Positions 21,975-58,911 of a stretch of DNA of 64,000 nucleotides are shown one piece after another. Where the stretch lies: IMG/VR virus record IMGVR_UViG_3300036781_000418, positions 62,001-126,000 of that record; one strand, written 5' to 3'. A program made the position numbers and the translations under genes. Under the pieces are notes generated by a model, which was given only the letters and a program-made list of their open reading frames with translations, was not told the origin of the DNA and ran no database searches. Position 1 is the first letter of the stretch; each line of letters begins with the position of its first letter.

Positions 21975-22796
21975 TCAAAGCTCGGCGAAGTACTCCAACC
22001 CGGCTTCCATCAGCTCGTCCTGGCAGTCGATGATAGCTGACTTGCTTTTGACCGGGATGTACTTGGTCACGATCTTGAAGGCCTTGAACCAGTCGGTGTC
22101 TTCGTGTATGTGTTGAGTGGTCAGCATGCGCAGCCCCTCAACCTTCAGGAGTGACAGCATCGGGCCGTCGAGCTTGCCACCAATCGCCAGGGTCTCAGCA
22201 AACTTAACACGGTTGGTAAGCTCCTTGAACGTGCAGTCCAGTTCAAACGGCAGCTGGTAGTATTGGGTCACAATGGTTGGCAGGTGCTGGAGCGCATTGT
22301 CCGCCTTAACCTCAGTCAACCAGGCGCTGCCTTCGATAAACATAGGGCAGCCCTCCAGCGACTTGAGGTGTCGACAGCTTTTAATGGTGAGGTCGCCTTC
22401 CAGTCGGCGTGGAGCGCCGACTAGCTCAACGATGCCGCAGTCTTCAACCTTGAGACCGGTGCCGGCTCCGGCACCCGTAATCTCCGGGCATCCTTCAAGG
22501 TTGGACAGCTCGCGGTTGCGGATCAGCTGCAGCGCGCCGACCTTCTTCGGACCACCTTCCAGCGTCTTGATGCGTGTGCCACCCAAGGTAAAGACCGCGC
22601 CCACCGTCTGTGGTGAACCACGTAGTGAGGTTAGGTTCACCGCCCAGATGCCCGCGCCGCCTGGTACGTGCTTCGGACATTGGGCCTCGAGCTTATAAAC
22701 ATCAAGAAGGCTCAGGCTGCCATGCTCGTCCAACACGCTGTCGTCCGCGTACCGCAGCTCGCGTTCACGTACCTCGCCAAGTTGGTTGATCTTCAT
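21975..22796 (-). CDS. Leucine-rich-repeat-like protein with CTS-like leader (273 aa)
   Basis: Repeats LTSLRGSP, IKTLEGGP, LSNLEGCP, LKSLEGCP. MKINQLGE leader. C-terminus CQDELMEAGLEYFAEL. Confidence 0.8.
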   Translation of the reverse strand: MKINQLGEVRERELRYADDSVLDEHGSLSLLDVYKLEAQCPKHVPGGAGIWAVNLTSLRGSPQTVGAVFTLGGTRIKTLEGGPKKVGALQLIRNRELSNLEGCPEITGAGAGTGLKVEDCGIVELVGAPRRLEGDLTIKSCRHLKSLEGCPMFIEGSAWLTEVKADNALQHLPTIVTQYYQLPFELDCTFKELTNRVKFAETLAIGGKLDGPMLSLLKVEGLRMLTTQHIHEDTDWFKAFKIVTKYIPVKSKSAIIDCQDELMEAGLEYFAEL

Positions 22797-23389
22797 AGGG
22801 TAGCCGCCTCCGTAAAACCAGCGTCAATTAGCTCGTCTTGGCAGGCTAGCATGTTAGCGGCTGTTCGTGGCAGCCTTAGGTACTTTTCCATTACGCCTTC
22901 AAACTCTTCTTGCTGAGTCTGCTTCAAGTGTGCACCTTGAAGGTGCACACTTCGTAGACTGTTGATCTTGAGTAGACCAAGGACTGGCACCAGCTTACTG
23001 ATACCAATGGCGATGCAGTGTTGGACGTACTTGTGTAGGTCCTTTAGCTCCAGCTCAAGTTCCGTATTGGCCAAGTTCAGACTTTCAAGTTCACGACCCT
23101 TCAACACGTGTAGGTCGTCCATCTTCAACTTGGATTGACCCTTAAGATGCAGCACGTTGATGTCATGTTGAACGCGCAGCTTGCTTAGACCGTCAAGGTT
23201 GGTCAGCCCGGTTCCCTCAAGGATGATGTACAGTGCCACGTCCTTGTTGCTGTCCCCAATTACTGTGACTGGAAAGTCATCAATGTTGGTGGCGTCCAAC
23301 TGAACCAACGCCACACGCAGCAGCGAGGAGGTCTTGGTGATCCGAAAATTACCTTCACCTTTGTAGGAAATCTCTTGAAGTAGGTTCAC
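22793..23389 (-). CDS. Leucine-rich-repeat-like protein (198 aa)
   Basis: LEGTGLTNLDGL, LESLNLANT repeats. C-terminus CQDELIDAGFTEAATL. Confidence 0.75.
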   Translation of the reverse strand: MNLLQEISYKGEGNFRITKTSSLLRVALVQLDATNIDDFPVTVIGDSNKDVALYIILEGTGLTNLDGLSKLRVQHDINVLHLKGQSKLKMDDLHVLKGRELESLNLANTELELELKDLHKYVQHCIAIGISKLVPVLGLLKINSLRSVHLQGAHLKQTQQEEFEGVMEKYLRLPRTAANMLACQDELIDAGFTEAATL

Positions 23390-23847
23390 TTGACTTCCTT
23401 GTGATCGGCGTCCACGGAGATCATGCGCATGATCTCCTCGTGGGTCGCCACAACCGTGCCGCTCTTCTGGTTGTTGAACGGCACGAAGGCTCCCGAACGG
23501 CGACGGTCAGTCTTCACTCGAGCGCGTGAGTTGGCCGCCTGCAGGGCGATGTTCAAGTACTGAGCGGCGACTTCAGCGTTGCGAGCCGCGTACCGAGGTT
23601 CAATCACCTCAAGGTAGGACGTCTGTAGTTCGTACGCGCCCATGGCCTGCTCGAACACGGTGTCGATCTTCTTGTCAATCTCCACGTCCTCGGCGTCCTT
23701 CTCCTCAGGTGCGGCCTGAGTGGCAAGGGCGGTGGACGGTTCGTTCACGATCTGTTCCGGCATGGCCGAGTCGTAGGTGTCGTCAAACTCGTTGGCGTCA
23801 ACGTCGAAGATCTGGTCAAGTGGTGAGTCGAATTTACGTGGGGTCAT
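23386..23847 (-). CDS. Probable terminase small subunit-like protein (153 aa)
   Basis: Acidic N-terminus, helical core with IEPRYAARNAEVAAQYL.IALQA and a short C-terminal helix. Coupled to the gp4-like gene. Assignment is by recalled resemblance only. Confidence 0.5.
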   Translation of the reverse strand: MTPRKFDSPLDQIFDVDANEFDDTYDSAMPEQIVNEPSTALATQAAPEEKDAEDVEIDKKIDTVFEQAMGAYELQTSYLEVIEPRYAARNAEVAAQYLNIALQAANSRARVKTDRRRSGAFVPFNNQKSGTVVATHEEIMRMISVDADHKEVK

Positions 23848-24359
23848 TTTGCGGTTGCGTCCTTGGTGTAGACCATGCTGGTCGGCGTCTGGCCTTGCTT
23901 ACGGAAGATCGACTTCTCGGTGATGACGCGGAACGTCGCACCTTGCGAGGCGGCGAACATGGCGGCGGCCTCCCACTTGGCCTGGTTAACGGCCACGATC
24001 ATTCGGTTCTGCGGGGTTGGGTTACGGCCCAGCACGGTTTCATGGTACGGCTTGATCTCAACGATCTCCTTCCGCACCGCACCTGAGGTGTCACGGTAGA
24101 TGACGATGAAGTCTGGGTAGTAACGGTGCACCAGGTTGTCAACTGGACTCTTATATGGAATTGCTAGTTCTTCAGACGCCCACTGAATCACCGACGGGTG
24201 CATGTCCAACCACTTCAGAAACGTCACCTCCCACGAGCTCCGGAAGAAGATCGCGTTGGGGTTGCCTACGTACTTGGCCGGATTCTTTGGAATGAACCGA
24301 CCCTTCATCGTCGAGCGTGTCTTGGTGTTGGCGCTGCGCGCCTGTCGTCCGTTCGCCAT
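23844..24359 (-). CDS. gp4: Head completion nuclease, gp4-like (171 aa)
   Basis: KGRFIPKNPAKYVG.P..I.FRSSWE..F..W.D....WASEEL.IPY.SP.D...HRYYPDF...EIKP is the T4 gp4/TnsA-like signature. Confidence 0.92.
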   Translation of the reverse strand: MANGRQARSANTKTRSTMKGRFIPKNPAKYVGNPNAIFFRSSWEVTFLKWLDMHPSVIQWASEELAIPYKSPVDNLVHRYYPDFIVIYRDTSGAVRKEIVEIKPYHETVLGRNPTPQNRMIVAVNQAKWEAAAMFAASQGATFRVITEKSIFRKQGQTPTSMVYTKDATAK

Positions 24360-24832
24360 TACTTTACGCTCCGCAGCTTCGCTTTAATGAGGGTGTTGTA
24401 GTTGTTGATGATCTTATTTATGAACGCCACCACCTTGTTTGGATCGGTAAAACCACGCTTAGTTGGAAACTTCGAGTCCCAGAACTTGTTCACGTCAACG
24501 ACGGAGTCGAAGCCGTTACCGAAGCCGCATCGGACATCGTAGGTGAGGCCTGTAGATCGACCAGGGCTGGAGTGACCGTTGTACGCTTCCAGCTGCACAA
24601 TAACCGAAATGTGGTCGGATTCATCTTCATCAGGGTCACCCAGCTTAAAGCCGTTCCAGTAGAACTCAGGGCTTTTATAGCCGCGTTCGACGGTCTGATG
24701 TCCGCTGATTTGAGGGTACGGTGTAAATCCGGCCTTTTCCAAGAGCTTACCAAACAAGAGCATGTCCACCTTGGCGTCTTCTGGATCCCAAGGTGGACTG
24801 GATTTGTTGACCTCAAATAGATGCAGCTTCAT
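24359..24832 (-). CDS. Putative internal head protein, array B member (157 aa)
   Basis: MKLHLFEV...PWDPEDAKVDMLLFGKLLEKAGF. Confidence 0.72.
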   Translation of the reverse strand: MKLHLFEVNKSSPPWDPEDAKVDMLLFGKLLEKAGFTPYPQISGHQTVERGYKSPEFYWNGFKLGDPDEDESDHISVIVQLEAYNGHSSPGRSTGLTYDVRCGFGNGFDSVVDVNKFWDSKFPTKRGFTDPNKVVAFINKIINNYNTLIKAKLRSVK

Positions 24833-25287
24833 TTGACCTTCTCGTATTTGGCCACGACTTCTTTGTCGTAGAGTTCAGCTCCGCGCTGCAGGCTTCTGAT
24901 CACAATTGACGGATCAGCTTGTGGCCCAGTTCCGTAGAACAGCTTGATCTGCGGAATGTTTGGCCTACTACCGGTCTTATCCACGAAGTAGTAGGAGAAG
25001 GAGTAGAACATACCGTCGGTTGGAGTGGACTTTGTTTTAGTAGGTCCCAGTCGTTCCACAGCTTCCATGAAGACCTGGAAGCTGAAGTCCTTTCGATCGC
25101 CCTTGAACATTGGGCTGTACATGGTCAGCTCAAGCCTTGGCGATGGCGCCGACACGCTCTCAATCGGTTCATGGCCGAAGCCGCGCTTCATCCAGATCTT
25201 CGAGAACAGGGTCAGATTTAGGCGCGCCTCTTCATCGTCCCATGGCTGGGCATCCTCAGGACGGGCTTCAAACAGGTCAAGTTTCAT
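24829..25287 (-). CDS. Putative internal head protein, array B member (152 aa)
   Basis: MKLDLFEA...PWDDEEARLNLTLFSKIWMKRGF. Confidence 0.72.
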   Translation of the reverse strand: MKLDLFEARPEDAQPWDDEEARLNLTLFSKIWMKRGFGHEPIESVSAPSPRLELTMYSPMFKGDRKDFSFQVFMEAVERLGPTKTKSTPTDGMFYSFSYYFVDKTGSRPNIPQIKLFYGTGPQADPSIVIRSLQRGAELYDKEVVAKYEKVK

Positions 25288-25751
25288 TGTTTCCCCTTCA
25301 GCTCGTATTTATCTTGGACGTACGGCTTGTAGACCGACTCGACCCAATAATCCAACCACTCCAGCACCTTCTTCTCTTGAAAGAGCTTCGTGCTAAGGAA
25401 CTGATCTCCCAACTCCTCAATGTCGGCTTCGGTATGCAGGGCACCGTTTACATTGGCGCCTACGTCAATCTCATAGACGAACGGAAAGCCGGCTGCCTTG
25501 GCGGTTTGGGCTGGTTTGGTGTCGCCACGGTTGTTACCAGCAAAAATGGAGACGTCCATCACGAAGTCATCATCGCCGTTCTTGTACACTGGACTCCGAA
25601 GGTAGAGGTCTTGACCTTCGTACGTAGGGTTGTTTCCCTTTGGAACCTTAATCGACGTGAAACCATGCTTCTTCATGAAGGCAGCGAACAGTTGGAGGTT
25701 CGTGTTCGCCTCGTCGTGGTCGAACTCCTCAAGTAGGCTGGTGAGCTTCAT
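25284..25751 (-). CDS. Putative internal head protein, array B member (155 aa)
   Basis: MKLTSLLEE.FDHDEANTNLQLFAAFMKKHGF. Confidence 0.72.
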   Translation of the reverse strand: MKLTSLLEEFDHDEANTNLQLFAAFMKKHGFTSIKVPKGNNPTYEGQDLYLRSPVYKNGDDDFVMDVSIFAGNNRGDTKPAQTAKAAGFPFVYEIDVGANVNGALHTEADIEELGDQFLSTKLFQEKKVLEWLDYWVESVYKPYVQDKYELKGKQ

Positions 25752-26248
25752 GGGGTCACCACCTTGAACTTGTTCTTGACGTGCGTCTCGTAGATGGCGA
25801 GCACCTTGCGCAGGTAGACCAGGAACTTTGATGGATCGTCGAACGCCTTCGACCAGGTGTTTTCAAACGTCTTCGTGACCGCGGAGTTAAGCCCCTGGGT
25901 TGCATGGGTCTTGTGATCCACTTCGTTCAGCAGGTCATACTCGATCTGGTACATCGTTGTCCATGGACCACGCCCTACGGATGCACGTCCACCATACGCG
26001 CTTAGGTTCATGTTGATGTACACGTTGTCGTAGTCTTCGTAGTCGTCCGTTTTAAACGGAACACGGAAGAGCGGGGAGGTGTACAGCTGCTTGTCGCCGC
26101 CGGAGTCGAGTCCATTGGGTTCTTCATGGATAACCTTGCCAGCCGTAAACCCAGCACGCTCCAACACCTTCCCAAACAGGTGAAAGTTTGTAAGCGCGTC
26201 GTCTTGGTCGTAGCCCTTGTTATGGGTCTCAAAAAGGGCGAGCTTCAT
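25748..26248 (-). CDS. Putative internal head protein, array B member (166 aa)
   Basis: MKLALFET...YDQDDALTNFHLFGKVLERAGF. Confidence 0.72.
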   Translation of the reverse strand: MKLALFETHNKGYDQDDALTNFHLFGKVLERAGFTAGKVIHEEPNGLDSGGDKQLYTSPLFRVPFKTDDYEDYDNVYINMNLSAYGGRASVGRGPWTTMYQIEYDLLNEVDHKTHATQGLNSAVTKTFENTWSKAFDDPSKFLVYLRKVLAIYETHVKNKFKVVTP

Positions 26249-27540
26249 CAGGTACCTCCACCAAGTAGATCACCGCTGCCCGCGAAGAGTGGTGTTGGCT
26301 GCGTGGTGCCGAAGCCTTGACCCGTTGAGTTTGTGAACGTTGCGTCACCGCCGAACGTTTGGCTGTCGGAGACGACTGGTCGTGATGGTCGAGCAAAACT
26401 TTGGGCCGCACTTGTGGTCAGCCCTGAAACCTTCGTCGTCGCGGTCGATCCAACGAGACTACCAACCAAATCGGCGGTACCACCCAAGCCAGGCACCACC
26501 CGAAGTTGACGACCCAGTGTGTCGCTGGTAATCTTCTGGGCAGCGCGGCCGAGGACGGCGCCAAGGGTGCTGCCGAGTAGACCCGATAGACCAGCGGCGT
26601 TACCACCAGTCGCCTTGCCTGGAACGCTGATGTCTCCAGGCGCGCCCTTCCAGGCGCGGTTCGAGTAGTCTGGGCCTGGGTTGGCGGTCAACGTGCCAAG
26701 TTCATTCATCACCATGAAGTCGTAGTCGAACCGCATGGACAGGCCGTTGAAGTCAGTTGACTCGTGCGCCATGTCTTCAAGGTCGAAGGACTCAATGCGC
26801 GGGTTAATGAAGTCCCAAGCCACGGCCTTAGGTGCGTCGTTCAACCCAACTGTGTGGTCAATGTACATCTGGATGATGCGGATACCTTGGATGACGTTGC
26901 CGATGTCCGAGTCAACGACCCCACGCTGGGCGAAGTCACGCCCAACGCCGAACGCCATACCAGAGCCGGAGTTGTAGGCCGCTACAACCTCGGGTAGGGT
27001 CTTGTAGTTGTTGATCGACTGCCGCGTGATTGGCGACTGGGCCATCATCAACAGCTTAAAGAAGTGGAACACGGAGTTGCCGACGTCTTCAACGAACGCC
27101 AACGTCAAGGCTTGGTGCTTGATGGTCTTCAGCACCTTCGTCTTGAAGTTGTACATGTTGACCTCCTCGTAGTCGTAGTCGACCTTTGGGCGGTCGATCG
27201 ACTTGATCATGTACGTGAAGTTCTGGTCCTTCGACAACTGGTCTACAAGCTGCTTGACTTCAGGGTTCGCAATGTTCGGCTTGAACAGGAACTGCACCTT
27301 GAACATGAACTTGAACTTTGGCCGAGAGTTCGAGTTCGCGGCACCAGCCGCGTAGTCCGAGGCGTGCCAGGTGCCGTCGTTTCGGTTGATGGGCGCGTTC
27401 TGGTTAACCCCAAAGGCGGAGCTAATTGCTGGGTTGATCTTGTTGCGTGCAAAGTCCTCAACCGCGGTGCCGAACAGCTCAGTGCCAGTCCGTTCAAGGT
27501 TGATGCCCGATGACTTAACGAGCTGGGAAATATCTGGCAT
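26248..27540 (-). CDS. Tail-tube-fold protein (gp54/tube initiator-like) with a Gly/Ser-rich C-terminus (430 aa)
   Basis: RPKFKFMFKVQF...IKSIDRPKVDY..EEVNMYN.K.KV...I....LTL.F.ED parallels the tube protein at 30539-31135. Confidence 0.7.
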   Translation of the reverse strand: MPDISQLVKSSGINLERTGTELFGTAVEDFARNKINPAISSAFGVNQNAPINRNDGTWHASDYAAGAANSNSRPKFKFMFKVQFLFKPNIANPEVKQLVDQLSKDQNFTYMIKSIDRPKVDYDYEEVNMYNFKTKVLKTIKHQALTLAFVEDVGNSVFHFFKLLMMAQSPITRQSINNYKTLPEVVAAYNSGSGMAFGVGRDFAQRGVVDSDIGNVIQGIRIIQMYIDHTVGLNDAPKAVAWDFINPRIESFDLEDMAHESTDFNGLSMRFDYDFMVMNELGTLTANPGPDYSNRAWKGAPGDISVPGKATGGNAAGLSGLLGSTLGAVLGRAAQKITSDTLGRQLRVVPGLGGTADLVGSLVGSTATTKVSGLTTSAAQSFARPSRPVVSDSQTFGGDATFTNSTGQGFGTTQPTPLFAGSGDLLGGGT

Positions 27541-27541
27541 G

Positions 27542-27572
27542 AAAAAGCCCTATGGAACCATAGGGCTATTTA
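27542..27572 (-). promoter_or_regulatory. Late promoter TAAATA directly followed by a perfect hairpin and T5 run
   Basis: TAAATA 27567-27572. Inverted repeat 27546-27555/27558-27567, then TTTTT before the ATG at 27540. Confidence 0.7.
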
Positions 27573-27589
27573 CAAGGGATTAGAGTTGT

Positions 27590-27910
27590 CTACTTTTCAA
27601 GTGGTCCAACTTTAACCGTGAAGTCGGATCGACCGCCTTCAAGGGCTGATACAAAGTTGGTGTCGTCAAAGACCAAGTCGTATGAGGCAAGGATCTTGCG
27701 AAACTTCTCCGACTTGATCATGTCGTACGTGTCTGAGGTGTTGGTTGGATCCTCAGGAAAGTTGATGTAGATGTGTTCATTCTTGAGGCCGCCCACGGAC
27801 GTGCCGACCTTCTTCAACAGCAAGTTGATCGCCCAGTCCAGGTCCTCGTACTCTTCGTCGTTCTTCAGGTCGATGCCGTACTTGCCTTCAAGCAGTTGTG
27901 TTAGCTTCAT
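27590..27910 (-). CDS. Putative internal head protein with CTS-like leader (106 aa)
   Basis: MKLTQLLEG leader. Its own TAAATA lies at 27929-27934. Confidence 0.7.
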   Translation of the reverse strand: MKLTQLLEGKYGIDLKNDEEYEDLDWAINLLLKKVGTSVGGLKNEHIYINFPEDPTNTSDTYDMIKSEKFRKILASYDLVFDDTNFVSALEGGRSDFTVKVGPLEK

Positions 27911-28664
27911 CTTTGGTCGTCGTTTCTCTATTTACAGCGTACTCACCTCGAGCTCGACCGCTTACCTTGGTTGGATCTTTCTCTGGTTGATCGGCCCAGC
28001 GATAACTAAGCCAGTTTGGAGAGGCAAGACGGTAGGTGAGGGTTCCACCCGCTAAGCTTAGCGCGGTGCAGGCTTCACGCATGTTCACATAGGCGACTTC
28101 GTCAATGATCAGCGCACGGTATCGTTGTTTGAACTTTTCTGAGGCCAATTGACCAGCCCGTTGGTTAGCCTTTGCTTCCTCAGATGGTTTGTAGCCGCGC
28201 TCCTTCAGGGTGTCGAGTCGGTTTTGAATTGCCTCGGCTGATATGGTTTTGCCTTTGTGTGCCTTGCTGATGTTGGCGCACCATTCAGGGGTGCGTTCAA
28301 CGGTCTTAAAGTGTTGGGATAGCTTCTGACGAGTTTCTTCGGATGTTGCTGGTCGATCAACTGCACCCAATCCACCAGCGCCACAGTTTAAACATTGTGG
28401 ATCAGCACGAAGTTCTGGTGTGATGATCTCTTTTTCACGATCTGAAGCAGCCTCCCTAGACTCACAAAGTTCTACAATTTCACGTGTGTGATTTTCTCTG
28501 CCATGCTTTTTCACTGAGCGTGTGAGGCGCACGCCGCTGCCTAGATATTGATCTTCAAGATCATCTGTGGAATGCATGCCAATGTAGTAGCGACCTGTGA
28601 TGATGCAGGTAGTCTTGTAGATGATGTGATATTTGCGACGAGAAGCTCTAATATGTTGAGACAT
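27888..28664 (-). mobile_element. Free-standing Seg-like GIY-YIG homing endonuclease (258 aa)
   Basis: YHIIYKTTC..TGRYYIGMHST..L.D.YLGSG motif, Glu in REKEII, LNCGAGG, then NUMOD3-like repeats and a C-terminal helix-turn-helix-like region. Lower GC than its flanks. Confidence 0.9.
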
Positions 28665-28668
28665 AACA

Positions 28669-28701
28669 AAATAGCTCTGTAGTTGAACACAGAGCTATTT
28701 A
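28669..28701 (-). promoter_or_regulatory. Late promoter TAAATA within a 12-bp hairpin upstream of the endonuclease
   Basis: AAATAGCTCTGT (28669-28680) pairs with ACAGAGCTATTT (28689-28700). TAAATA at 28696-28701. Confidence 0.7.
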
Positions 28702-28724: not shown

Positions 28725-30440
28725 TCAACTATATTGCAAAAGGTCCTTCCAGTTCGGTGCGCCCGAACGGAGGATGTCCATGCCCTTGGTAAACTCACGC
28801 ATGGTGACTTGGTCGAACACGCCTTCCGCGTGCTGCTTGATCAGCGCGTCAAGCAGCTCTTCCTTCCGCTCAATCGACACGTCGGTGCCACCAAGGGTTG
28901 GGAGGATCGAGCGCATGCGAATGAGAATCTGTTCAGGCGTCATCGTCATGTCGATCTTCGCTGAACGTGACAGGATGGCGGTGTCAAACTCCGACTTCTT
29001 CAAGTTGGAGATGAAGATCACACGGCCCGTGAACTCGAACGACGATGGGAACTTGATCTTGTCTGGGGACATCGACGTGGCCTTGGCGGCCGCCTTCTCC
29101 TTGGCCCGCAGTTGACGTGGCGTAAGGTCCTCGTCGTCCTCTTCATCTTCAGGTGGTGGCGCCTTAGCCGTCTCACCGTTCAAGTCACGATCGATCTGGG
29201 TGTAGAGCTCTTCACGTCGATCATGCGACATCTTAGAGACGTTGATCGTCTGGTTGGAGACCCAGGAAATTTCACGCACCGGCGATGTGTCAAGGGCGGC
29301 CTTCAGAATGTTCGTTGCATCCTCGTTGCCCCACATAGAGTCCAAGTCGTCGAAGATGACGAGGCCGCTCTTGCGGTACATAAACAGCGTCTCGTAGATC
29401 TTGATTGGGGACGCCTTGCCTGACAGCTTCTGGTAGTCCTCACCCTTCACCAAACCGTTGTGCTCGACCGTCTGCATGATGGTGTACGTTTTGCCGGTAC
29501 CTGGACCACCGTAGACGATCAGCGAACGAAGGGAACCACGGCAGGCCATCTCCACGAGCTGGGCCATGTGGCCGTATAGGGTCGCTGGGTCCTTCAGTTC
29601 ATCGGGAGTGGCTCCCTTCTGCATGGAGTTCTGAATCTGCTTGTACAGGGCCTGGGCTTCCGGCACGTCGGCCGCCGGAAGGAAGCGCTTCGTGGTTGGA
29701 TCCTGCGCGGTCACCTTGATGTAGAGGATCTTACCGCCGGCCACGGCGACCTTTGAGCCCTTATCATCGACGTCGATCACGTCCTTGACTTCGTCGTCCT
29801 TAGACGACTTCGGCTCAACCTTCGTGTCCTTGGACGTCACGTCCTCAGCGGCGCCAGGTTCTGAGTTCCACTTACCGCGACCGATCTTCTGGCTGCGAAT
29901 GTAGGCTGGAATCAACACGTCGTTCTTGTCGGCACACGCCTTGATCTGCTCCCACGTAACGCTCGACGCTCCAGACTTGCCGTACATCGCGACCATCATG
30001 TCGTAGAACTTGTCGGAGCCGACACGTGACGCCATCTCGTCAAGCTGAATCGTCTCGTTCATCGCGTTAACGGCGACTCGGCCCACCTTAGGGGCCTTGA
30101 TGAGCTTCGCGATCTCGTTGAAGGAGCCTAGCACCGTGGCCGATTCGAGGTCGCTGACGTTGATCGTGTGAGCCGGACCGTGGTTAGTGGCGAAGTGGTC
30201 CCAGACGTCGATGTTCGTCAGGTGACCGCCCTTAGCACGTAGTCGAAAGGCACGGGTTCCGAAGATGAACAGGTAGCCGAGCTCACCACCAAGGTGCTCC
30301 ACACCCTTCTTACCACCGTAGCGGTAGACGGAGGTACCAAGTACCTTCGGTATGCGTCGGGCGAAGACTGAAACCAGTCGTTCAATGTTGTCGTCGTTGA
30401 CGGTAGCCTCAACGAGGTAGGAGGCGAAGTTGATTTTCAT
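28725..30440 (-). CDS. P-loop AAA-type ATPase with a long N-terminal region (571 aa)
   Basis: Walker A GGPGTGKT, Walker B VIFDDLD, VIFISN sensor region and ILSRS arginine-finger-like motif. MKINFASYLVEA leader. TAAATA at 30466-30471. Confidence 0.85.
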   Translation of the reverse strand: MKINFASYLVEATVNDDNIERLVSVFARRIPKVLGTSVYRYGGKKGVEHLGGELGYLFIFGTRAFRLRAKGGHLTNIDVWDHFATNHGPAHTINVSDLESATVLGSFNEIAKLIKAPKVGRVAVNAMNETIQLDEMASRVGSDKFYDMMVAMYGKSGASSVTWEQIKACADKNDVLIPAYIRSQKIGRGKWNSEPGAAEDVTSKDTKVEPKSSKDDEVKDVIDVDDKGSKVAVAGGKILYIKVTAQDPTTKRFLPAADVPEAQALYKQIQNSMQKGATPDELKDPATLYGHMAQLVEMACRGSLRSLIVYGGPGTGKTYTIMQTVEHNGLVKGEDYQKLSGKASPIKIYETLFMYRKSGLVIFDDLDSMWGNEDATNILKAALDTSPVREISWVSNQTINVSKMSHDRREELYTQIDRDLNGETAKAPPPEDEEDDEDLTPRQLRAKEKAAAKATSMSPDKIKFPSSFEFTGRVIFISNLKKSEFDTAILSRSAKIDMTMTPEQILIRMRSILPTLGGTDVSIERKEELLDALIKQHAEGVFDQVTMREFTKGMDILRSGAPNWKDLLQYS

Positions 30441-33163: not shown

Positions 33164-34348
33164 TCATGTCTTCTTAGCCGCCGCCTGCGCTTTTAGGGCC
33201 AGGGCGTCCTCCAATGGGATTCCAGCTTTCGCGATCAACTTGGTCACCTTCTTCAGGTATTCGTTGCGGTACAGTTCAGGCGTCGTGGCGATCTTCAACG
33301 CCTCCAACCAGCGGCCAAGTTGCTCCAGCAGGAGCTCCTCTTCATGGTGGTAGTCAGCACCACCCGCGACTCTGAACTCCAGGTACCCGTCGGCCAGCTT
33401 ACTGAGGTTTACGGAGCTGTATTTACCAGACTGCTTCAGGATTTCCCGTGCCTCGTCCATCACCACCTTGACGTCACGCGCCCCAGCTCCAGTACCGATC
33501 GCCTTTATCAGCCGCTTGGCGTGCGGTACGGCTACGTTGGAGAACAGTCGGTTGAACTGCTTCAGCGCGTGCTCCTCGCCCATGAACAGGACCAGCTTCA
33601 GTGGATCCAGTTGGTTGAGGTTTGGGATGGAGATGTTGACGTGTACTCCAGTGCTTGAGTTCGTCTGGAACTTGGCCTTGGAGAAGAAGGCAAAGCATGT
33701 CCTCATGGTCGCGATAGCCTCCTTGGCGGGCAGTGGGGCGGTGACAATTTCAAGTCCAACACCTCGTTTATCTTCTGGCTTAATGGACGAATCTTCAACG
33801 ATCTTCCAGTCTTTAATTCCATGGTCATCGAGCTTGAAGTAAACGCCTAGCTTATCACCCAACGCGAAACCAACGCTCTTGGCGGTCTCCCAGAAGGCAT
33901 GGTGCTGATCGAGGTTGGCCTCAACCTTGTAGACCTCGTGGTGACTGGCGTCGGTGAAGCCAAACTTTGGGTCAAGGCGATGCTTCTTTACAAGCTCAAA
34001 CACCGAGCCGTAGGCGTCGTTGATCCATGCATTTTCATCTGGCTGTTCAAATTCATCTGGGTCACCTTTGTGCTCAGCTCGTCGATCTTCAACCCAGTAG
34101 TCGAACTCGCGCTCTAGCTTTTGGTGTTCAGCTCGCGACAGGGTGAAGTACTCGGCGATGATGTAGTAGTCGTCCGAGTCTAGGTCGATCGACGCGGGCG
34201 GTTCATCGTCACCATGGGCTTGAAAGAACGGTGAGTTTTCCGGTACGACCACCTCAAACTCGAAGCCAACGTGGGCGTTGGATTGGTCGATGCCGGAGGT
34301 GAGGGTCTTGGCGCTCATGGAGCGCTCGAAGAGGACGTCTAGTTTCAT
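33164..34348 (-). CDS. Putative amidoligase (COOH-NH2 ligase, Amidoligase_2-like) with CTS-like leader (394 aa)
   Basis: HVGFEFE, W.IVEDSSI, GLEIVT.P, NSSTGVHVNIS, KYSSVN and YLEFR motifs. MKLDVLFER start. Confidence 0.85.
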   Translation of the reverse strand: MKLDVLFERSMSAKTLTSGIDQSNAHVGFEFEVVVPENSPFFQAHGDDEPPASIDLDSDDYYIIAEYFTLSRAEHQKLEREFDYWVEDRRAEHKGDPDEFEQPDENAWINDAYGSVFELVKKHRLDPKFGFTDASHHEVYKVEANLDQHHAFWETAKSVGFALGDKLGVYFKLDDHGIKDWKIVEDSSIKPEDKRGVGLEIVTAPLPAKEAIATMRTCFAFFSKAKFQTNSSTGVHVNISIPNLNQLDPLKLVLFMGEEHALKQFNRLFSNVAVPHAKRLIKAIGTGAGARDVKVVMDEAREILKQSGKYSSVNLSKLADGYLEFRVAGGADYHHEEELLLEQLGRWLEALKIATTPELYRNEYLKKVTKLIAKAGIPLEDALALKAQAAAKKT

Positions 34349-52338: not shown

Positions 52339-52412
52339 TCACGATACCAAGGTTCGTTGGCCGACCGCTTGCTTACAATGCAAGCATACCATCCGTAGCT
52401 GTCCTCAGTCTC

Positions 52413-53489: not shown

Positions 53490-53490
53490 C

Positions 53491-53808
53491 ATGGCCTTTT
53501 GGAAAACTGCCCCCGTCTCGGAAGAGCCTGAAATTACCCTGTACGACTGGAAGGTCTTCGAGCTTAACGACGGCTCGCGTCACTTCGTCGGCACCAACGG
53601 CGCGCGCGGCTCCGGCCGAGTCAGTTCGTCGATCCAAACATTTGACCCAACCACGATGAGTGGCGTGACGCGCTCTGGGCGCGTCTACAAGCTGGTTGGT
53701 GAAAGTGGGGATTCAATTAACGGTCTCTACACCTGGACAGGTTGGTGCCATGTTAACCGTGTCGATGACTGCATCGACGTATCAAACTTTATCGGAGAAA
53801 CTAAATGA
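53491..53808 (+). CDS. Hypothetical protein (105 aa)
   Basis: RHFVG....GRVSS.I..FD.....GVTRSGRVY.L.G pattern. Coupled within the operon. Confidence 0.7.
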   Translation: MAFWKTAPVSEEPEITLYDWKVFELNDGSRHFVGTNGARGSGRVSSSIQTFDPTTMSGVTRSGRVYKLVGESGDSINGLYTWTGWCHVNRVDDCIDVSNFIGETK

Positions 53809-54347
53809 CCTGTATCGTCGGACTTGAATACCACGGCAAGGTGCACATTGGTGGAGATCTACAAGGCACTGGCTGGAACAACAAGATCAAGCACGACCAG
53901 CCTAAGGTGTTCGTACGCAACGGCATCGCCTTCGGCTACACGACCTCCTACCGGTTCGGTCAGCTGCTTGAACATGTCCTGCCCGATCCAATCGTGCCGG
54001 CTAATCCAGATGAAATCTACCCATGGTTGATCAAGGTTCTGGTGCCGAGCATCAAGGACACGCTGAAGGACGCTGGCTATGAAGGTGGTGGCAACTGCCT
54101 AATCGGTGTAAAGAGCACCTTGTGGGAGCTGCAGAACGACTACTCAATCCTTCGTTCCGTGAACGGTTACGCGTCGGTTGGTTCTGGATATGAGTACGCC
54201 AACGGCGCGATGTACGCCATGTTGACCAAGCTGAAAGGACAGGCGTTGACGGACGAAGGCGCTCAAGACCTCGTTGAGCTGGCCATCGAGGCGGCCGGCA
54301 CGTTCTCACCGTCGGTGGGTGTTGACTCCGTGATCGTGACGGTGTGA
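53805..54347 (+). CDS. HslV/proteasome-beta-like Ntn hydrolase (180 aa)
   Basis: MTCIVG start (N-terminal Thr), GGD, K, FG..., ASVGSG..YA.GAM..., A.EAA..F...VG: Ntn-fold pattern. Confidence 0.78.
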   Translation: MTCIVGLEYHGKVHIGGDLQGTGWNNKIKHDQPKVFVRNGIAFGYTTSYRFGQLLEHVLPDPIVPANPDEIYPWLIKVLVPSIKDTLKDAGYEGGGNCLIGVKSTLWELQNDYSILRSVNGYASVGSGYEYANGAMYAMLTKLKGQALTDEGAQDLVELAIEAAGTFSPSVGVDSVIVTV

Positions 54348-56101: not shown

Positions 56102-56128
56102 TAAATAGGGGAGCAATGCTCCCCTATT
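56102..56128 (+). promoter_or_regulatory. Late promoter TAAATA overlapping an 11-bp hairpin
   Basis: TAAATA 56102-56107. Stem AATAGGGGAGC/GCTCCCCTATT, ATG at 56133. Confidence 0.68.
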
Positions 56129-56132
56129 CCAC

Positions 56133-56792
56133 ATGAAGCTCAACATCTTCGAGGCGCCGCCCTCCATCACCCGTAAGGTTCACCCGGACGCCATCAAGGG
56201 ACCCGCATGGATGAACAACATGGGGCTAACTGACCTCGCCGATCGATGGAAAAGCCGTACCAAGGAGGTGGACGGCGACGTGTTGATGGTCAATAACCAG
56301 CTGAAGAACCTTAAGGGCGGCCCGACGATCATCCATGGGACGTACAACGCCTCTAAGAACAAGTTGACGACGTTTGAAGGGTCCCCCACCTACGTGTCAA
56401 AGGACTTCATCGTCTACGGCAACCGGCTAACTGACTTTCTTGGACTGCACATTGAAGTCGGTGGTGACGTGGACCTTAGCAACAACCTGTTCAGGTCCCT
56501 GAAGGACATCCACAAGCACATCCTACACACCAAGACGCTGTCCATTGAGGACAACCCAATCGAGTCGCACGTGCTTGGGATCTTCAAGATCAAGGGCCTG
56601 GAAGCCCTCGAGTTCTTTCCGCAGAACGACGTAAACCCCAAAGGCATAACGGCTGACTACACAGAAACGGACAACAAGGTAGCCAAGATCGTCAACGACT
56701 GCTTCAAGGCTCACGGTGCGACGAACGTCGGCCTGTTGGAGTGCCAGGAACAGTTGATCGACGCCGGCTTCCATGAATACGCCCAGCTGTAA
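56133..56792 (+). CDS. Leucine-rich-repeat-like protein with CTS-like leader (219 aa)
   Basis: NQLKNLKGGP, NKLTTFEGSP, NRLTDF and NLFRSL repeats. MKLNIFEA start. C-terminus CQEQLIDAGFHEYAQL. Confidence 0.82.
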   Translation: MKLNIFEAPPSITRKVHPDAIKGPAWMNNMGLTDLADRWKSRTKEVDGDVLMVNNQLKNLKGGPTIIHGTYNASKNKLTTFEGSPTYVSKDFIVYGNRLTDFLGLHIEVGGDVDLSNNLFRSLKDIHKHILHTKTLSIEDNPIESHVLGIFKIKGLEALEFFPQNDVNPKGITADYTETDNKVAKIVNDCFKAHGATNVGLLECQEQLIDAGFHEYAQL

Positions 56793-56819
56793 ATACAACC
56801 TGAACCTACCAGGACCAAC

Positions 56820-57293
56820 ATGAAAACCTTGCTCGAACTTCTCTCCATGCTTCATGAGGCCGACGACGATACCACTGAGGATCAAGCGAAGACCGCCAAG
56901 GACCTCTGGGACGCCGGGTCACCTGAGGCCTACGTTTCGAAGATCCAATATGGCATCAAGAAGAACGACAACGGCACCTACCAGGTGACAACCGAGAACA
57001 ACGACCGCCGTCAGGTGATCAGCCAGTCGGTCTCGGCTTCCTACGTCTCGTCGAACTACGTCAAGATGTCCAAGGACGCGACCCCAGACGTCGAAGGCTA
57101 CGTGCTCTACCGTTCGGTCGGCCAGCAGGAAGCCATCCAGTACAAGGGTGATACAGCTCGAATCGACGTGGACGGTAAGACCGTCACCATGAACGCGGGC
57201 GACTACCTCATTAAGACGACGGACGACAACGGTAAGACCTTCTTCTCAGTTGAAACTGAGGACGCCTTCGAATCGGATTGGGAACAGAAGTGA
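56820..57293 (+). CDS. Hypothetical, possibly internal head protein (157 aa)
   Basis: MKTLLELLSMLHEA leader. TAAATA at 56790-56795 overlaps the upstream stop. Confidence 0.72.
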   Translation: MKTLLELLSMLHEADDDTTEDQAKTAKDLWDAGSPEAYVSKIQYGIKKNDNGTYQVTTENNDRRQVISQSVSASYVSSNYVKMSKDATPDVEGYVLYRSVGQQEAIQYKGDTARIDVDGKTVTMNAGDYLIKTTDDNGKTFFSVETEDAFESDWEQK

Positions 57294-58108
57294 AGATTCA
57301 TCAGCTGCATGAGATTTCGTCGGCCGACGAGTACCGCCAGACCACCGCGTATGGTGAGCCCGTGTTCATCATCGAACACTCCTCGACAGGGGACTTTAGC
57401 CCATTCAACAAGTTGATCGCGGTGGCGGCAAAGAAGGCTATGACGGGCGGCCACATGATGTTGAAGGTTGAGGTTAGGAACGCGCTTAAAAGCACCAAGG
57501 GCCTGTCGAAAGCCGACATCGGCGAGATCGACGTATCGAGAAACGACTTGATCTCAATGGAAGGTCTTGAGTGGTTTGACAGCTTCTTGAACATCTCCTC
57601 CAACAACTTGACGGAGCTACGCTGTGCGAAGACCATGCACGCGCTTGAGGTGGACAACAACGACCTGCACACCCTTACAGGTGGTCCAAAGCACTTGAGC
57701 GGACACTACTCAGCTTCTCACAACAAGCTGACTGACTTTTCCGGAGCACCGGTCGAGGTCTCGCAATCGCTGCACCTGTCGCACAACCAGATCTCGTCGT
57801 GGAGCGGCGTGAGCGGTATGCATATTCAGGACGACCTTGACCTAACCGGTAACAAGCTGAGCTCCATGCGCGGTGTTGATAAGGTCCTCAGCGGCTGTGA
57901 GGACCTTATCCTTACCGACAACCCACCGCCAAAGCACGTGTTGAACCTGTTCAACGTCGACGAGATCCGTCAGGGGGTTACCTTTGACGACGCCAAGCTG
58001 TCTAAGATCATCAACAAGCACCTGCACACCGGTGGTAAAGAAGGCATGCTCGACTGCCAAGAAGAGTTGATCGACGCTGGGTACTCACAGGAAGTCGCCT
58101 CCCTATGA
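57290..58108 (+). CDS. Leucine-rich-repeat-like protein with CTS-like leader (272 aa)
   Basis: GTG start (MKIHQLHEI) overlapping the upstream TGA. Several xxNxLxxLxGxP repeats. C-terminus CQEELIDAGYSQEVASL. Confidence 0.82.
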   Translation: MKIHQLHEISSADEYRQTTAYGEPVFIIEHSSTGDFSPFNKLIAVAAKKAMTGGHMMLKVEVRNALKSTKGLSKADIGEIDVSRNDLISMEGLEWFDSFLNISSNNLTELRCAKTMHALEVDNNDLHTLTGGPKHLSGHYSASHNKLTDFSGAPVEVSQSLHLSHNQISSWSGVSGMHIQDDLDLTGNKLSSMRGVDKVLSGCEDLILTDNPPPKHVLNLFNVDEIRQGVTFDDAKLSKIINKHLHTGGKEGMLDCQEELIDAGYSQEVASL

Positions 58109-58911
58109 AGCTACTTCAGGCGCTGTGTGAAGATACTCGAAAGATGAAGATGAAGGATGGGTCGTCCTACCGCATCGTTGAAAGCCCAAACACGCGTACC
58201 ATCTACATCGAAGAAACCGAGACAGGTGACCTAACGCCGTTCCATGGTCAATGGGAGCATATGCGCGAGGGCTTTGAGCACATGATTAAAATCAGTATTA
58301 CCTACGGTAGAATTGGCGGCTTCAACAGCTTCCACGGACTGCCAGCCGAGATCTGTGAGCACGCTGAGTTTAAGTTGGCGGGCAATGACTACATGGACAA
58401 GCTTCAAGGCTGGCCTAGTGGTGGTGAACCATACAGCTTCACGATTGAAAACGCCGCCCTCTCTACCTTTGAAGGTTTTCCAGACAAGTTTGGACACGAT
58501 CTTTCAGTTGAAAACGTTCCCATTAAGTCGTTCAAGGGCTTCCCATCTAACGTTGGCTATTCCTGCAACCTACATGATCTTGACGTAGTTGACTTCACCG
58601 GTGCTACTGGATCTACTGGGCGCAACGTTGACCTTCGCCGTTGTCATGAACTAAAGTCGTTCCGTGGCATTGACAAGCTGTTCAGCGGTGGTTTGGCAAG
58701 CACCTTGTCGATTGATAAGGTGCGTTCAATGAAGCATATCCTGCACGTCATGAACGTTCCAAATCTCCGATTTGTCAGCTTCTCTGACAACACACCCTTG
58801 TCACTACTCATCAACGAACACCTCGATGCCGGTCACGGCAAGGCGGGCGTTGTTCACCTTCAAAACGCCCTGCTCGATGCGGGGTATGACGAAGAGTTCG
58901 CTAGCCTTTAA
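58105..58911 (+). CDS. Leucine-rich-repeat-like protein with CTS-like leader (268 aa)
   Basis: FNSFHGLP, LSTFEGFP, IKSFKGFP and LKSFRGI repeats. C-terminus LQNALLDAGYDEEFASL. Confidence 0.8.
   Translation: MKLLQALCEDTRKMKMKDGSSYRIVESPNTRTIYIEETETGDLTPFHGQWEHMREGFEHMIKISITYGRIGGFNSFHGLPAEICEHAEFKLAGNDYMDKLQGWPSGGEPYSFTIENAALSTFEGFPDKFGHDLSVENVPIKSFKGFPSNVGYSCNLHDLDVVDFTGATGSTGRNVDLRRCHELKSFRGIDKLFSGGLASTLSIDKVRSMKHILHVMNVPNLRFVSFSDNTPLSLLINEHLDAGHGKAGVVHLQNALLDAGYDEEFASL

What the first reader, a model, noticed from the sequence alone, without database searches (positions are those of the whole stretch)
21975..58911. Five LRR-like proteins in two distant clusters share both a leader and a terminal CQxELIDAG(F/Y)xExAxL motif
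Seen C-termini: CQDELMEAGLEYFAEL (21975), CQDELIDAGFTEAATL (22793), CQEQLIDAGFHEYAQL (56133), CQEELIDAGYSQEVASL (57290) and LQNALLDAGYDEEFASL (58105). Each is preceded by an (H/P)(V/M)L.L(L/F).(I/V)..L cap and 2-6 xLxxLxGxP repeats, and all five end in Leu. Inference: a modular receptor-like family with a variable LRR recognition surface and a constant C-terminal anchor, possibly injected binders or decoys of host immune proteins.
Basis: partly seen in the sequence, partly recalled or inferred. Interest (0 to 1): 0.65.

Follow-up and report, generated by a model that had tools for sequence, protein, structure and literature searches.

The report
Virion-linked LRR protein family of jumbo phages

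Summary
All five ORFs exist with the quoted C-termini, the (H/P)(V/M)LxL cap, 2-5 LxxLxGxP repeats at an exact 21-residue period, and an MK(L/I)xQLxE leader. The window lies in a 342.6-kb jumbo phage with a T4-type head. Two more paralogs sit just past the window, directly after the major capsid gene.

The AlphaFold model is an LRR solenoid (Z about 15 to LRR proteins only). The last 75 residues form a family-specific module with no Pfam, PDB-sequence or PDB-fold match. A profile of it finds 2,553 protein clusters, with the module at the very C-terminus. Atlas neighbours are 89-100% viral. Among 185,579 species genomes, true members appear only on one mis-binned 330-kb phage contig. It is therefore not a generic LRR cap.

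The leader is not family-specific. 44 of 414 ORFs in this genome carry it, in at least 30 unrelated families. It resembles the T4 capsid targeting sequence and ends in the (L/I)xE site of T4-type prohead proteases, which every complete genome holding the family encodes. RsoM2USA ORF89, a member, was reported among ten abundant virion bands.

Best reading, about 50%: packaged internal or ejected LRR binders. The target and the role of the tail module are unknown.

The parts
21975..22796 (-). Paralog A, 273 aa: leader MKINQLGE, five 21-residue LRRs, an insertion, then the C-terminal module ending CQDELMEAGLEYFAEL
22793..23389 (-). Paralog B, 198 aa: GTG start overlapping the upstream stop (GTGA), leader MNLLQE, degenerate LRRs, C-terminal module ending CQDELIDAGFTEAATL. 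Its stop overlaps A's ATG (ATGA).
56133..56792 (+). Paralog C, 219 aa: leader MKLNIFE, three LRRs, C-terminal module ending CQEQLIDAGFHEYAQL
57290..58108 (+). Paralog D, 272 aa: GTG start, leader MKIHQLHE, low-confidence N-terminal part, about seven LRRs, C-terminal module ending CQEELIDAGYSQEVASL. This is the protein that was modelled.
58105..58911 (+). Paralog E, 268 aa: leader MKLLQALCE, LRRs, most divergent tail (LQNALLDAGYDEEFASL)
22773..22796 (-). Leader of A (8 codons) ending in L-G-E. Equivalent leaders lie at 23369-23389(-), 56133-56153(+), 57290-57313(+) and 58105-58131(+).
   Evidence: T4 CTS is MKTYQEFIAE (PMC8442874)
21975..22211 (-). C-terminal module of A (last 78 aa plus stop). 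Equivalent modules lie at 22793-23029(-), 56556-56792(+), 57872-58108(+) and 58675-58911(+).
56102..56107 (+). TAAATA late-promoter-like motif (context GATAAATAG) 25 nt before C's ATG, followed by the hairpin AGGGGAGC-AAT-GCTCCCCT
56790..56795 (+). TAAATA motif (GTAAATAC) overlapping the stop codon of C, 24 nt before the ATG of ORF 56820, which heads the array ORF56820-D-E
56820..57293 (+). 157-aa ORF with a leader-like start (MKTLLELLSMLHE). Its stop overlaps D's GTG start. No family match.
27567..27572 (-). Nearest strong TAAATA motif (GTAAATAG) upstream of the co-directional array tail-tube-like gene, four MKLxLFE genes, head closure gene, ORF153, B, A. No terminator-like site was found on the minus strand between 27546 and 20500.
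23844..24359 (-). Head closure (T4 gp4-like) gene, two genes upstream of B in the same array. This is the structural-module context of cluster 1.

Best explanation
These are members of a large, phage-restricted, multi-copy family of small (about 20-30 kDa) LRR proteins built in three parts.

1. An 8-10-residue N-terminal leader, MK(L/I)xxL(L/F/H)E. It works like the T4 capsid targeting sequence. It takes the protein into the prohead core and is then cut off after the Glu by the phage's T4 gp21-type (S77) prohead protease.
2. A solenoid of two to seven 21-residue LRRs with a fast-diverging surface. This is the binding part.
3. A 65-75-residue family-specific C-terminal module: the last strand HVLGLLKI, two helices, and a tail (D/N)I(L/F)xCQxELI(D/E)AG(L/F/Y)xx(Y/F)AxL-COOH. 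It closes the solenoid and probably contacts one conserved partner.

The genes are transcribed late with the structural genes. The mature proteins stay in the head and enter the cell with the DNA, where each paralog binds a different host (or rival-phage) protein before any phage gene is expressed.

Shown: the family, its architecture in sequence, its spread and its phage restriction. Modelled, not solved: the LRR fold. Shown for one homologue only, from the literature: presence in purified virions. Inferred: targeting by the leader, cleavage, late timing, ejection and host targets.
For: Fold:
- The AF2 model of D has pLDDT above 90 for residues about 100-272, while the leader (residues 1-12) has pLDDT 44.
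- All 50 best Foldseek and VIA matches are LRR proteins, with Z up to 15.7.

Family spread and restriction:
- The C-module profile finds 2,553 clusters at E<=1e-3 and 833 at E<=1e-10. The module ends at the last residue in nearly all of the best 150.
- Within those, C is conserved in 141/145, Q in 145/145, A(-3) in 145/145 and L(-1) in 140/150. 81 of 146 start with the leader.
- Atlas neighbours are 89-100% viral.

Leader:
- 44 of 414 gene-like ORFs carry it, against 9 of 1,531 internal Met positions. After the leader is removed, these fall into at least 30 BLAST-distinct families.
- Leu and Glu codons in the leader vary synonymously, and the same peptide is kept in 57%-GC G000 and 41%-GC RsoM2USA. 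Selection therefore acts on the peptide.
- The T4 CTS is MKTYQEFIAE and is cut once by gp21 (PMC8442874). T4 gp21 cleaves after Glu, for example ITE-6 and LTE-619 in Alt (PMC5694885). RsoM2USA ORF89 starts MKTFKQFLSE.
- Each of the seven paralogs has (L/I)xE with the Glu at residues 6-12, at or 2-3 residues past the end of the leader.

Protease and its specificity:
- PF03420 is present in G000, in all three family-bearing genomes that are at least 50% complete, and in XacN1 and PA5oct.
- All four (L/I)xE sites of the G000 capsid protein lie in its first 44 residues. The acidic scaffold candidate has 14 such sites. The protease itself starts MQQILKE.

Timing and context:
- [C/G]TAAATA[G/C] occurs 111 times, against 40 or fewer for any other permutation. 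84 copies have an ORF start within 70 nt, usually 21-31 nt.
- The motif precedes the sheath, tube, sheath-stabiliser, adaptor, baseplate-wedge and protease genes.
- 36 of 44 leader genes lie within 3 kb downstream of a same-strand motif, against 193 of 370 other genes (p=1.7e-4).
- Cluster 3 follows portal, protease, scaffold candidate and capsid genes, with one 187-aa ORF between. Cluster 1 lies inside the tail/head-completion array.

Virion:
- RsoM2USA ORF89 (28.57 kDa) is one of ten abundant bands of purified virions identified by LC-MS/MS (PMC8504454, section 25). The identity and mass of that ORF were checked here.
Against: - No member of this phage has been shown to be in a virion. The RsoM2USA assignment is one gel band that 'most likely corresponds' to ORF89.
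- The proteins are mildly acidic (pI 5.4-6.3), whereas the T4 internal proteins are basic.
- There is no sequence homology to T4 IPI, IPII or IPIII. The resemblance covers 8-10 residues only.
- (L/I)xE sites are not clearly depleted in the mature parts of leader proteins (observed/expected 0.93 against 1.14 in other proteins). Many members have L-I-E or L-M-E inside the tail motif.
- In the related phage XacN1, the virion-packed lipase and chitinase have no such leader. PA5oct, whose virion proteome is mapped, shows no leader expansion. The leader is therefore not needed for packaging in the wider clade.
- Cluster 2 lies next to recombination genes, not structural genes.
- Nothing here identifies what the LRR or the C-terminal module binds.
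Confidence: 0.5

Rival explanations
1. The proteins are external virion decoration or adhesin proteins. The conserved C-terminal module anchors them on the capsid or tail surface, and the variable LRR faces outward to bind host-surface or environmental ligands, in the way Hoc-like decorations or exchangeable receptor-binding proteins do.
For: - One homologue was reported in virions (PMC8504454).
- Cluster 1 lies between the baseplate wedge and head-closure genes.
- A constant end joined to a variable binding body is the usual design of exchangeable phage adhesins.
- The acidic pI is unlike that of the T4 internal proteins.
- The tail residues are modelled as ordered, and their position relative to the free C-terminus is fixed.
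Against: - The leader resembles the T4 CTS and ends in the prohead-protease site, and it is shared with about 37 other small proteins.
- Seven to fifteen paralogs per genome would be many for surface decorations.
- No docking partner is apparent.
- Two paralogs lie just downstream of the capsid gene, not with the fibre genes.
Confidence: 0.15
2. The proteins are not virion proteins. They are intracellular late (or middle) proteins that bind host or phage factors during infection. The shared leader would then serve another purpose, such as efficient initiation on leader-proximal codons, a common N-terminal helix, or recognition by a chaperone or protease. The RsoM2USA band would be a co-purifying contaminant or a mis-assignment.
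For: - Most leader genes lack a clear Shine-Dalgarno sequence and are translationally coupled through ATGA/GTGA overlaps, so the first codons could matter for expression.
- Cluster 2 sits next to the SbcC-like and resolvase genes.
- XacN1's packaged enzymes lack the leader.
- (L/I)xE sites are not clearly depleted in leader proteins.
Against: - Synonymous codon variety in the leader, and its conservation across genomes of 41% and 57% GC, point to a peptide signal rather than an RNA signal.
- The (L/I)xE ending has no translational rationale.
- Leader genes are enriched behind late-promoter-like motifs.
- ORF89 was among the ten most abundant virion bands (PMC8504454).
Confidence: 0.2
3. The terminal motif is only a generic LRR C-cap found throughout cellular LRR proteins, and the paralogs are ordinary LRR proteins acquired from a host.
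For: - LRR families commonly have conserved caps.
- Some SDS22-class and axonemal LRR structures align up to residue 264 of the model.
Against: - There is no Pfam or NCBIfam cap or LRR family at threshold.
- No PDB sequence matches the module (best E 0.065).
- The module modelled alone has no PDB fold match (best Z 3.1).
- The exact motif pattern in 185,579 species genomes gave true members only on one 330-kb contig, and that contig encodes this phage lineage's capsid protein.
- Atlas neighbours are 89-100% viral.
Confidence: 0.03

Closest known systems
Ralstonia phage RsoM2USA ORF88, ORF89 and ORF90, plus about 12 weaker copies
   Same: - True family members, with leader (MKLHEISE, MKTFKQFLSE, MSFKTFLE), LRR body and terminal CQxxLIxxG(Y/L)xxxAE(I/M/L).
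- The phage lineage is the same: the capsid protein is 52% identical.
- ORF89 was reported in virions (PMC8504454).
   Different: - Only 25-30% identical to the window's copies.
- They are annotated as hypothetical, and the family, leader and tail motif were not described in that paper.
- RsoM2USA also has a divergent subfamily of about 200 aa ending LQxxLIxNGFxxL(V/A/I).
[quoted passage not shown]
   Same: - A short N-terminal leader, M-K-x-(Y/F/L)-x-x-(F/L)-x-x-E, ending in an (I/L)xE site for a gp21-type protease.
- Otherwise unrelated, fast-evolving bodies that share only the leader.
- A T4-type head gene set in the same genome.
   Different: - No sequence homology beyond the leader.
- The leader is 8 residues here, against 10 in T4.
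- These proteins are acidic rather than basic.
- They have an LRR fold and a conserved C-terminal module.
- About 44 leader-bearing genes, against three in T4.
- Packaging and cleavage are not shown here.
Paralogous ejection-protein families of giant phages SPN3US and phiKZ (PMC5694885)
   Same: - Diverged paralogs that keep a near-identical N-terminal propeptide, cut after Glu by a T4-related prohead protease. An example is SPN3US gp53/gp54, whose first 15 residues are identical.
- Many different proteins are packed in the head.
   Different: - A different phage lineage and protease family (S80, motif A/S-x-E).
- Those proteins are not LRR proteins and lack this C-terminal module.
Bacterial type III effector LRR domains (IpaH, SspH1/2, YopM class)
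   Same: - Short (20-22-residue) LRR units.
- Structural matches at Z 13-14 (4nkg, 9h6w, 7ya7).
- A weak SspH2 LRR-region hit (E 4.5e-6, far below cut-off).
- In both cases the LRR is delivered into another cell as a binding domain.
   Different: - No NEL E3-ligase domain and no type III secretion context.
- The C-terminal module is unrelated.
- These are phage-encoded proteins aimed at bacteria.
SDS22-class LRR proteins with a C-terminal LRR cap
   Same: They are among the best structural matches (6mky, 6hkw, 9fqr; Z about 15), with alignment reaching into the C-terminal helices.
   Different: There is no sequence match to any cap family. The module modelled alone matches nothing.

Membership tests
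Leucine-rich repeat (LRR) superfamily | Tandem 20-30-residue repeats with an LxxLxLxxN/CxL-type conserved segment | tested here: met
   LxxLxGxP occurs at an exact 21-residue spacing, 2-5 times per protein. The consensus is ...(F)x(C/S)xxNxLtSLeGxPxxVxG....
Leucine-rich repeat (LRR) superfamily | Curved solenoid fold with a parallel beta-sheet on the concave face | tested here: met
   This rests on a predicted model only. pLDDT is above 90 over residues 100-272. All top-50 Foldseek and VIA matches are LRR proteins, with Z up to 15.7. The atlas search gives TM 0.76 to viral LRR clusters.
Leucine-rich repeat (LRR) superfamily | Match to a Pfam LRR model above the gathering score | tested here: not met
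   Only D matches LRR_4, at 20.3 bits against a cut-off of 27. The other four have no hit.
T4-type capsid-targeted internal (ejected) head proteins | N-terminal leader of about 10 residues resembling MKTYQEFIAE, shared by otherwise unrelated proteins | tested here: met
   The leader MK(L/I)xxL(L/F)E is found in 44 of 414 ORFs, against 9 of 1,531 internal Met positions, and in at least 30 families. RsoM2USA ORF89 starts MKTFKQFLSE. The T4 sequence is taken from PMC8442874.
T4-type capsid-targeted internal (ejected) head proteins | gp21-type prohead protease in the genome, and an (L/I)xE site at the end of the leader | tested here: met
   PF03420 scores 88.9 bits at G000 129812-130219. The site is present in all seven leaders. 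The capsid protein's four sites all lie in its first 44 residues.
T4-type capsid-targeted internal (ejected) head proteins | Protein physically inside the mature head, leader removed, ejected with the DNA | not testable with these tools
   The only evidence is a literature report that the homologue RsoM2USA ORF89 is in an abundant virion band (PMC8504454). Its location within the virion and its N-terminus are unknown.
T4-type capsid-targeted internal (ejected) head proteins | Small, highly basic, DNA-associated protein, or sequence homology to IPI, IPII or IPIII | tested here: not met
   pI is 5.4-6.3. No PHROG or Pfam family with a known function matches any of the five; no direct comparison with the T4 IP sequences was run.
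IpaH/SspH/YopM type III LRR effectors | LRR domain joined to a NEL E3-ligase domain (IpaH/SspH), in a secretion-system context | tested here: not met
   The proteins end with the C-terminal module. There is no NEL hit. NCBIfam SspH2 matches the LRR region only, at 24.9 bits against a cut-off of 1,243.
Known LRR C-terminal caps (LRRCT, SDS22-type LRRcap) | Sequence or fold match of the C-terminal module to a described cap | tested here: not met
   There is no Pfam hit. The best PDB sequence E-value is 0.065. The module modelled alone gives a best Z of 3.1.

The most novel reading that the evidence does not exclude
The MK(L/I)xxL(L/F)E leader marks about 44 genes (10% of this 342-kb genome, in at least 30 unrelated families) as cargo of a T4-type capsid-targeting and protease system. 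On this reading the phage injects a large and diverse protein 'ejectome'. The LRR family is its expandable binder arm: hypervariable, pre-made inhibitors or decoys aimed at host defence proteins. Bacterial STAND/NLR-like sensors that end in the same LRR plus C-terminal module (P0044) would be either the targets being mimicked or hosts that captured the phage domain.
Probability: 0.2. Interest if true: 0.85.

Novelty: new variant of a known kind. Interest (0 to 1): 0.6.

Why it matters
If the reading is right, a simple sequence tag would predict which proteins of this jumbo-phage lineage are loaded into the head and delivered with the DNA. That turns dozens of 'hypothetical' genes into a testable list. 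It would also extend the T4 internal-protein idea (pre-made anti-defence proteins) to a large, LRR-based, rapidly diversifying family.

The family has at least 2,553 clusters at 50% identity and no Pfam model. It is seen in only one cultured phage, so it is a sizeable blind spot in phage annotation.

The near-invariant C-terminal module, with a fixed distance to the free carboxyl end, is a clean target for structure and partner hunting. Leader plus module could also serve as handles for packaging foreign proteins into jumbo-phage capsids.

Tried and rejected
- Megablast of the region against GenBank phages gave no match.
A degenerate DNA pattern for CQ(D/E)(E/Q)LIDAG was used instead.
- The pattern matches in Crocinitomicaceae, Oscillospiraceae and Hydrogenophilales MAG contigs are chance. 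No profile hit lies there.
- A borderline Apaf-1 CARD alignment to the C-module (E about 0.45) was not pursued. It was treated as noise.
- Depletion of (L/I)xE sites in leader proteins was weak (0.93 against 1.14) and is inconclusive.
- I looked for independent proteomic support in relatives. XacN1's virion-packed lipase and chitinase lack the leader. PA5oct has only about 9 regex hits, which is background level. No test was possible there.
- Complex prediction of the scaffold candidate with paralog C gave no verdict (score 0.00). It is not evidence either way.
- PHROG scans of ten other leader-bearing proteins in the window gave no function, apart from a weak amidoligase-like hit for the 394-aa ORF 33164-34348.
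- No alternative genetic code was used or needed.

Full report
**What is there.** The five ORFs exist exactly as described.
- A: 21975-22796(-), 273 aa.
- B: 22793-23389(-), 198 aa.
- C: 56133-56792(+), 219 aa.
- D: 57290-58108(+), 272 aa.
- E: 58105-58911(+), 268 aa.

The quoted C-termini are letter-perfect. D starts at GTG 57290 (MKIHQLHE), as in the database copy P0001. This start overlaps the upstream stop. The cap (H/P)(V/M/I)LxL(L/F)x(V/I)xxL is present in all five. LxxLxGxP recurs 2-5 times at an exact 21-residue period, with only degenerate copies in B.

The window is G000:62001-126000 of a 342,591-bp virus record with direct terminal repeats and 57% GC. A profile of the five finds two more paralogs just beyond the window:
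- G000 133888-134628, ending CQEELIDAGYDEYAKL.
- G000 134625-135356, ending MQELWMDLGLEDLAQL.

No other ORF in the genome matches. As a non-circular check, a profile made only from 91 outside sequences recovers exactly these seven among 1,715 ORFs, with E from 2e-20 to 5e-8. Among the paralogs, identity is 67% in the leader, 20-24% in the body and 45% in the last 22 residues.

**The phage.**
- The capsid protein is T4 gp23-like. It is 52% identical to Ralstonia phage RsoM2USA and 45% identical to XacN1 and the Stenotrophomonas phages.
- The SbcC-like protein is 35% identical to RsoM2USA.
- The first 45 kb of the window, on the minus strand, is the virion module. It holds a 2,918-aa structural protein, the baseplate wedge, head closure, tail tube, sheath, sheath stabiliser and adaptor genes.
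- Just past the window lie the portal, a T4 gp21-type protease (PF03420, 88.9 bits), an acidic scaffold candidate and the capsid protein. One 187-aa ORF follows, and then paralogs F and G.

**Fold.** AlphaFold2 was run on D with a 26-sequence alignment. It gives pLDDT 81.8 overall and above 90 for residues about 100-272. The model is a strand-per-repeat solenoid followed by helices 235-245 and 249-262 and an ordered tail. The leader has pLDDT 44.
- Foldseek returns only LRR proteins, including SDS22, IpaH3, Nogo receptor and LGR. E-values are weak, but probability is about 1.
- VIA-align against 48,161 chains gives Z 12-15.7, again for LRR proteins only.
- The atlas shape search gives TM 0.76 to a viral cluster.
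- Pfam sees only a sub-threshold LRR_4 hit in D. NCBIfam sees only a weak hit to the LRR region of SspH2.

**The C-terminal module.** The last 65-78 residues align across all members as NPIxSHVLGLLKIxGL, then a variable stretch, then IINKHL, then DI(L/F)xCQxELIDAG(L/F)xEYAQL.
- A profile of this module against 1.84 billion representative proteins finds 2,553 clusters at E<=1e-3 and 833 at E<=1e-10. In nearly all of the best 150 the match runs to the last residue. Lengths are mostly 150-290 aa.
- Within those 150, C is kept in 141/145, Q in 145/145, A(-3) in 145/145 and L(-1) in 140/150.
- It has no PDB sequence match (best E 0.065) and no Pfam model.
- Modelled alone (pLDDT 81.6), it has no PDB fold match (best Z 3.1).
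- ESM-Atlas neighbours are 89-100% viral.
- The degenerate DNA pattern for CQ(D/E)(E/Q)LIDAG was scanned over one genome for each of 185,579 prokaryote species. It gives true members only on one 330-kb contig binned with a Pseudobdellovibrionaceae MAG. That contig encodes a capsid protein 47-60% identical to G000's, so it is a phage of the same lineage.
- In IMG/VR the pattern finds multi-copy arrays, with at least 10 copies in 12 kb of L005.
- Among 50,697 GenBank phage records, only RsoM2USA has complete members. It has 5 strong and about 10 weaker matches.

**The leader.** The shared start is not a property of this family.
- 44 of 414 gene-like ORFs of G000 begin with M(K)(L/I)xxL(L/F/H)E. 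Only 9 of 1,531 internal Met positions match the same pattern.
- After the leader is removed, these ORFs fall into at least 30 BLAST-distinct groups.
- Codons for Leu and Glu in the leader vary freely. The same peptide is kept in RsoM2USA at 41% GC. Selection is therefore on the peptide.
- 81 of 146 family representatives worldwide start with it, with the consensus MKLKELFEE.
- It resembles the T4 capsid targeting sequence MKTYQEFIAE. That sequence is sufficient to load proteins into the T4 prohead core and is removed by gp21 (PMC8442874, PMC3012670, PMC5694885). RsoM2USA ORF89 starts MKTFKQFLSE.
- All seven paralogs have (L/I)xE with the Glu at residues 6-12. T4 gp21 cuts after Glu in such motifs, for example ITE-6 and LTE-619 in Alt (PMC5694885).
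- G000's capsid protein has four (L/I)xE sites, all within its first 44 residues. The scaffold candidate has 14. The protease itself begins MQQILKE.
- PF03420 is present in every family-bearing genome that is at least 50% complete.

**Timing.** The motif [C/G]TAAATA[G/C] is reminiscent of the T4 late promoter TATAAATA; that comparison rests on my own knowledge.
- It occurs 111 times, against 40 or fewer for any other permutation of the same letters.
- 84 copies have an ORF start within 70 nt downstream. The usual spacing is 21-31 nt.
- It precedes the tube, sheath, sheath-stabiliser, adaptor, wedge and protease genes.
- It lies 25 nt before C (56102-56107), 24 nt before ORF 56820 that heads the array ORF56820-D-E (56790-56795, overlapping C's stop codon), and 21 nt before F.
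- A and B lie in a co-directional array headed by a motif at 27572. No terminator-like site was found on the minus strand between 27546 and 20500. A weaker motif at 24420 has atypical spacing.
- Leader genes are enriched within 3 kb downstream of same-strand motifs: 36 of 44 against 193 of 370 (p=1.7e-4).

Late timing is inferred from these associations and was not measured.

**Virion evidence.** The RsoM2USA paper reports SDS-PAGE and LC-MS/MS of purified virions. It assigns one of ten abundant bands to 'ORF89, 28.57 kDa, unknown' (PMC8504454, section 25). RsoM2USA_89 is a family member (253 aa, 28.56 kDa). This is the only experimental link. It is a single band assignment, and it does not say where in the virion the protein sits.

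**Weighing.** The best-supported reading is that these are late, virion-packaged LRR proteins. They would be loaded by a T4-like targeting leader, trimmed by the S77 protease, and probably ejected with the DNA to bind targets in the newly infected cell. I put it at about 0.5. The points against are these:
- The proteins have an acidic pI.
- (L/I)xE sites are not clearly depleted in the mature parts.
- XacN1's packaged enzymes lack the leader.
- PA5oct shows no leader expansion.
- Cluster 2 sits among recombination genes.
- There are no direct data for this phage.

The rivals are external decoration or adhesin proteins anchored by the C-module (0.15), intracellular proteins whose leader has another role (0.2), and a generic LRR cap (0.03).

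The role of the C-module is open. It is clearly part of the folded end of the solenoid. However, the near-invariance of residues at fixed distances from the free carboxyl end suggests an additional conserved contact.

**A lead on the 'immune decoy' idea.** One representative, P0044 (1,001 aa), joins a STAND NTPase region (NPHP3_N/NACHT-like) to a C-terminal 127 residues homologous to this family, including the terminal motif (hhalign probability 99.6). It lies among SIR2, NACHT-WD40 and NADAR genes on a 110-kb contig. This is a single case, and its meaning is untested.

Noticed in passing
window 24359-26248 (-): Four tandem paralogs of 152-166 aa, all starting MKL(H/D/T/A)L(F/L)E. They have no family match and lie between a tail-tube-like gene and the head closure gene. 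Other leader-bearing small ORFs lie at 13611-16537, 27590-27910, 33164-34348 (394 aa, weak amidoligase-like hit) and 35474-36007.
   Followed up: partly
window 20616-21818 (-): Three tandem paralogs of 126-149 aa, all ending (Q)ARYAWL(M/T)FAAMIAREQA. They lie directly downstream of paralog A and have no PHROG match.
   Followed up: no
window 56102-56132, 27540-27572; G000 219272, 272334: Several TAAATA late-promoter-like motifs are followed at once by a GC-rich hairpin and then the start codon, for example TAAATAG-GGGAGC-AAT-GCTCCCC-tattccac-ATG. This could be a 5'UTR stem-loop or an overlapping terminator of the upstream gene.
   Followed up: no
window 56787-56795: The last Leu codon and stop codon of paralog C (CTG TAA) form part of the next late-promoter-like motif (GTAAATAC). 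In the overlapping gene pairs, the terminal Leu codon CTA plus TGA overlaps the next gene's ATG (CTATGA).
   Followed up: partly
window 53805-54347 (+): An HslV-family (proteasome-like Ntn) peptidase gene lies directly upstream of the SbcC-like gene.
   Followed up: no
window 27888-28664 (-): A homing-endonuclease-like ORF (PHROG 314, E 3e-41) lies in the tail-gene array, between the leader-bearing ORF 27590-27910 and the 571-aa ORF 28725-30440.
   Followed up: no
L002 5661-6947 (G000 131661-132947): The major capsid protein has four (L/I)xE sites, all within its first 44 residues and none in the remaining 384. This is consistent with a T4-like N-terminal propeptide.
   Followed up: partly
L041 8001-11006: A 1,001-aa STAND-NTPase protein ends in the same LRR plus C-terminal module. 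It lies in a defence-island-like neighbourhood with two SIR2 genes, a NACHT-WD40 gene and two NADAR genes.
   Followed up: partly
RsoM2USA (W01) 190-210 kb: A divergent subfamily of about ten proteins of about 200 aa, starting MKL(H/S/F)EI and ending LQxxLIxNGFxxL(V/A/I). They are weak matches to the C-module profile.
   Followed up: partly
L014-L018, L021 (contig CAZFPB010000002.1, 330 kb): A contig binned in a Pseudobdellovibrionaceae MAG carries at least 11 family members and a capsid gene of this phage lineage. It is most likely a jumbo-phage genome binned with a bacterium. The capsid match is split into two pieces, which may reflect an insertion.
   Followed up: partly
L001 5644-8166 (RsoM2USA ORF86): The 96-kDa protein reported in RsoM2USA virions, separated from the LRR cluster only by the small ORF87, has a clear AAA+ ATPase-type region and a weaker second ATPase-like N-terminal match.
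   Followed up: no
G000 genome-wide: Most leader-bearing genes have no recognisable Shine-Dalgarno sequence, and many start in ATGA or GTGA overlaps with the preceding stop codon.
   Followed up: no
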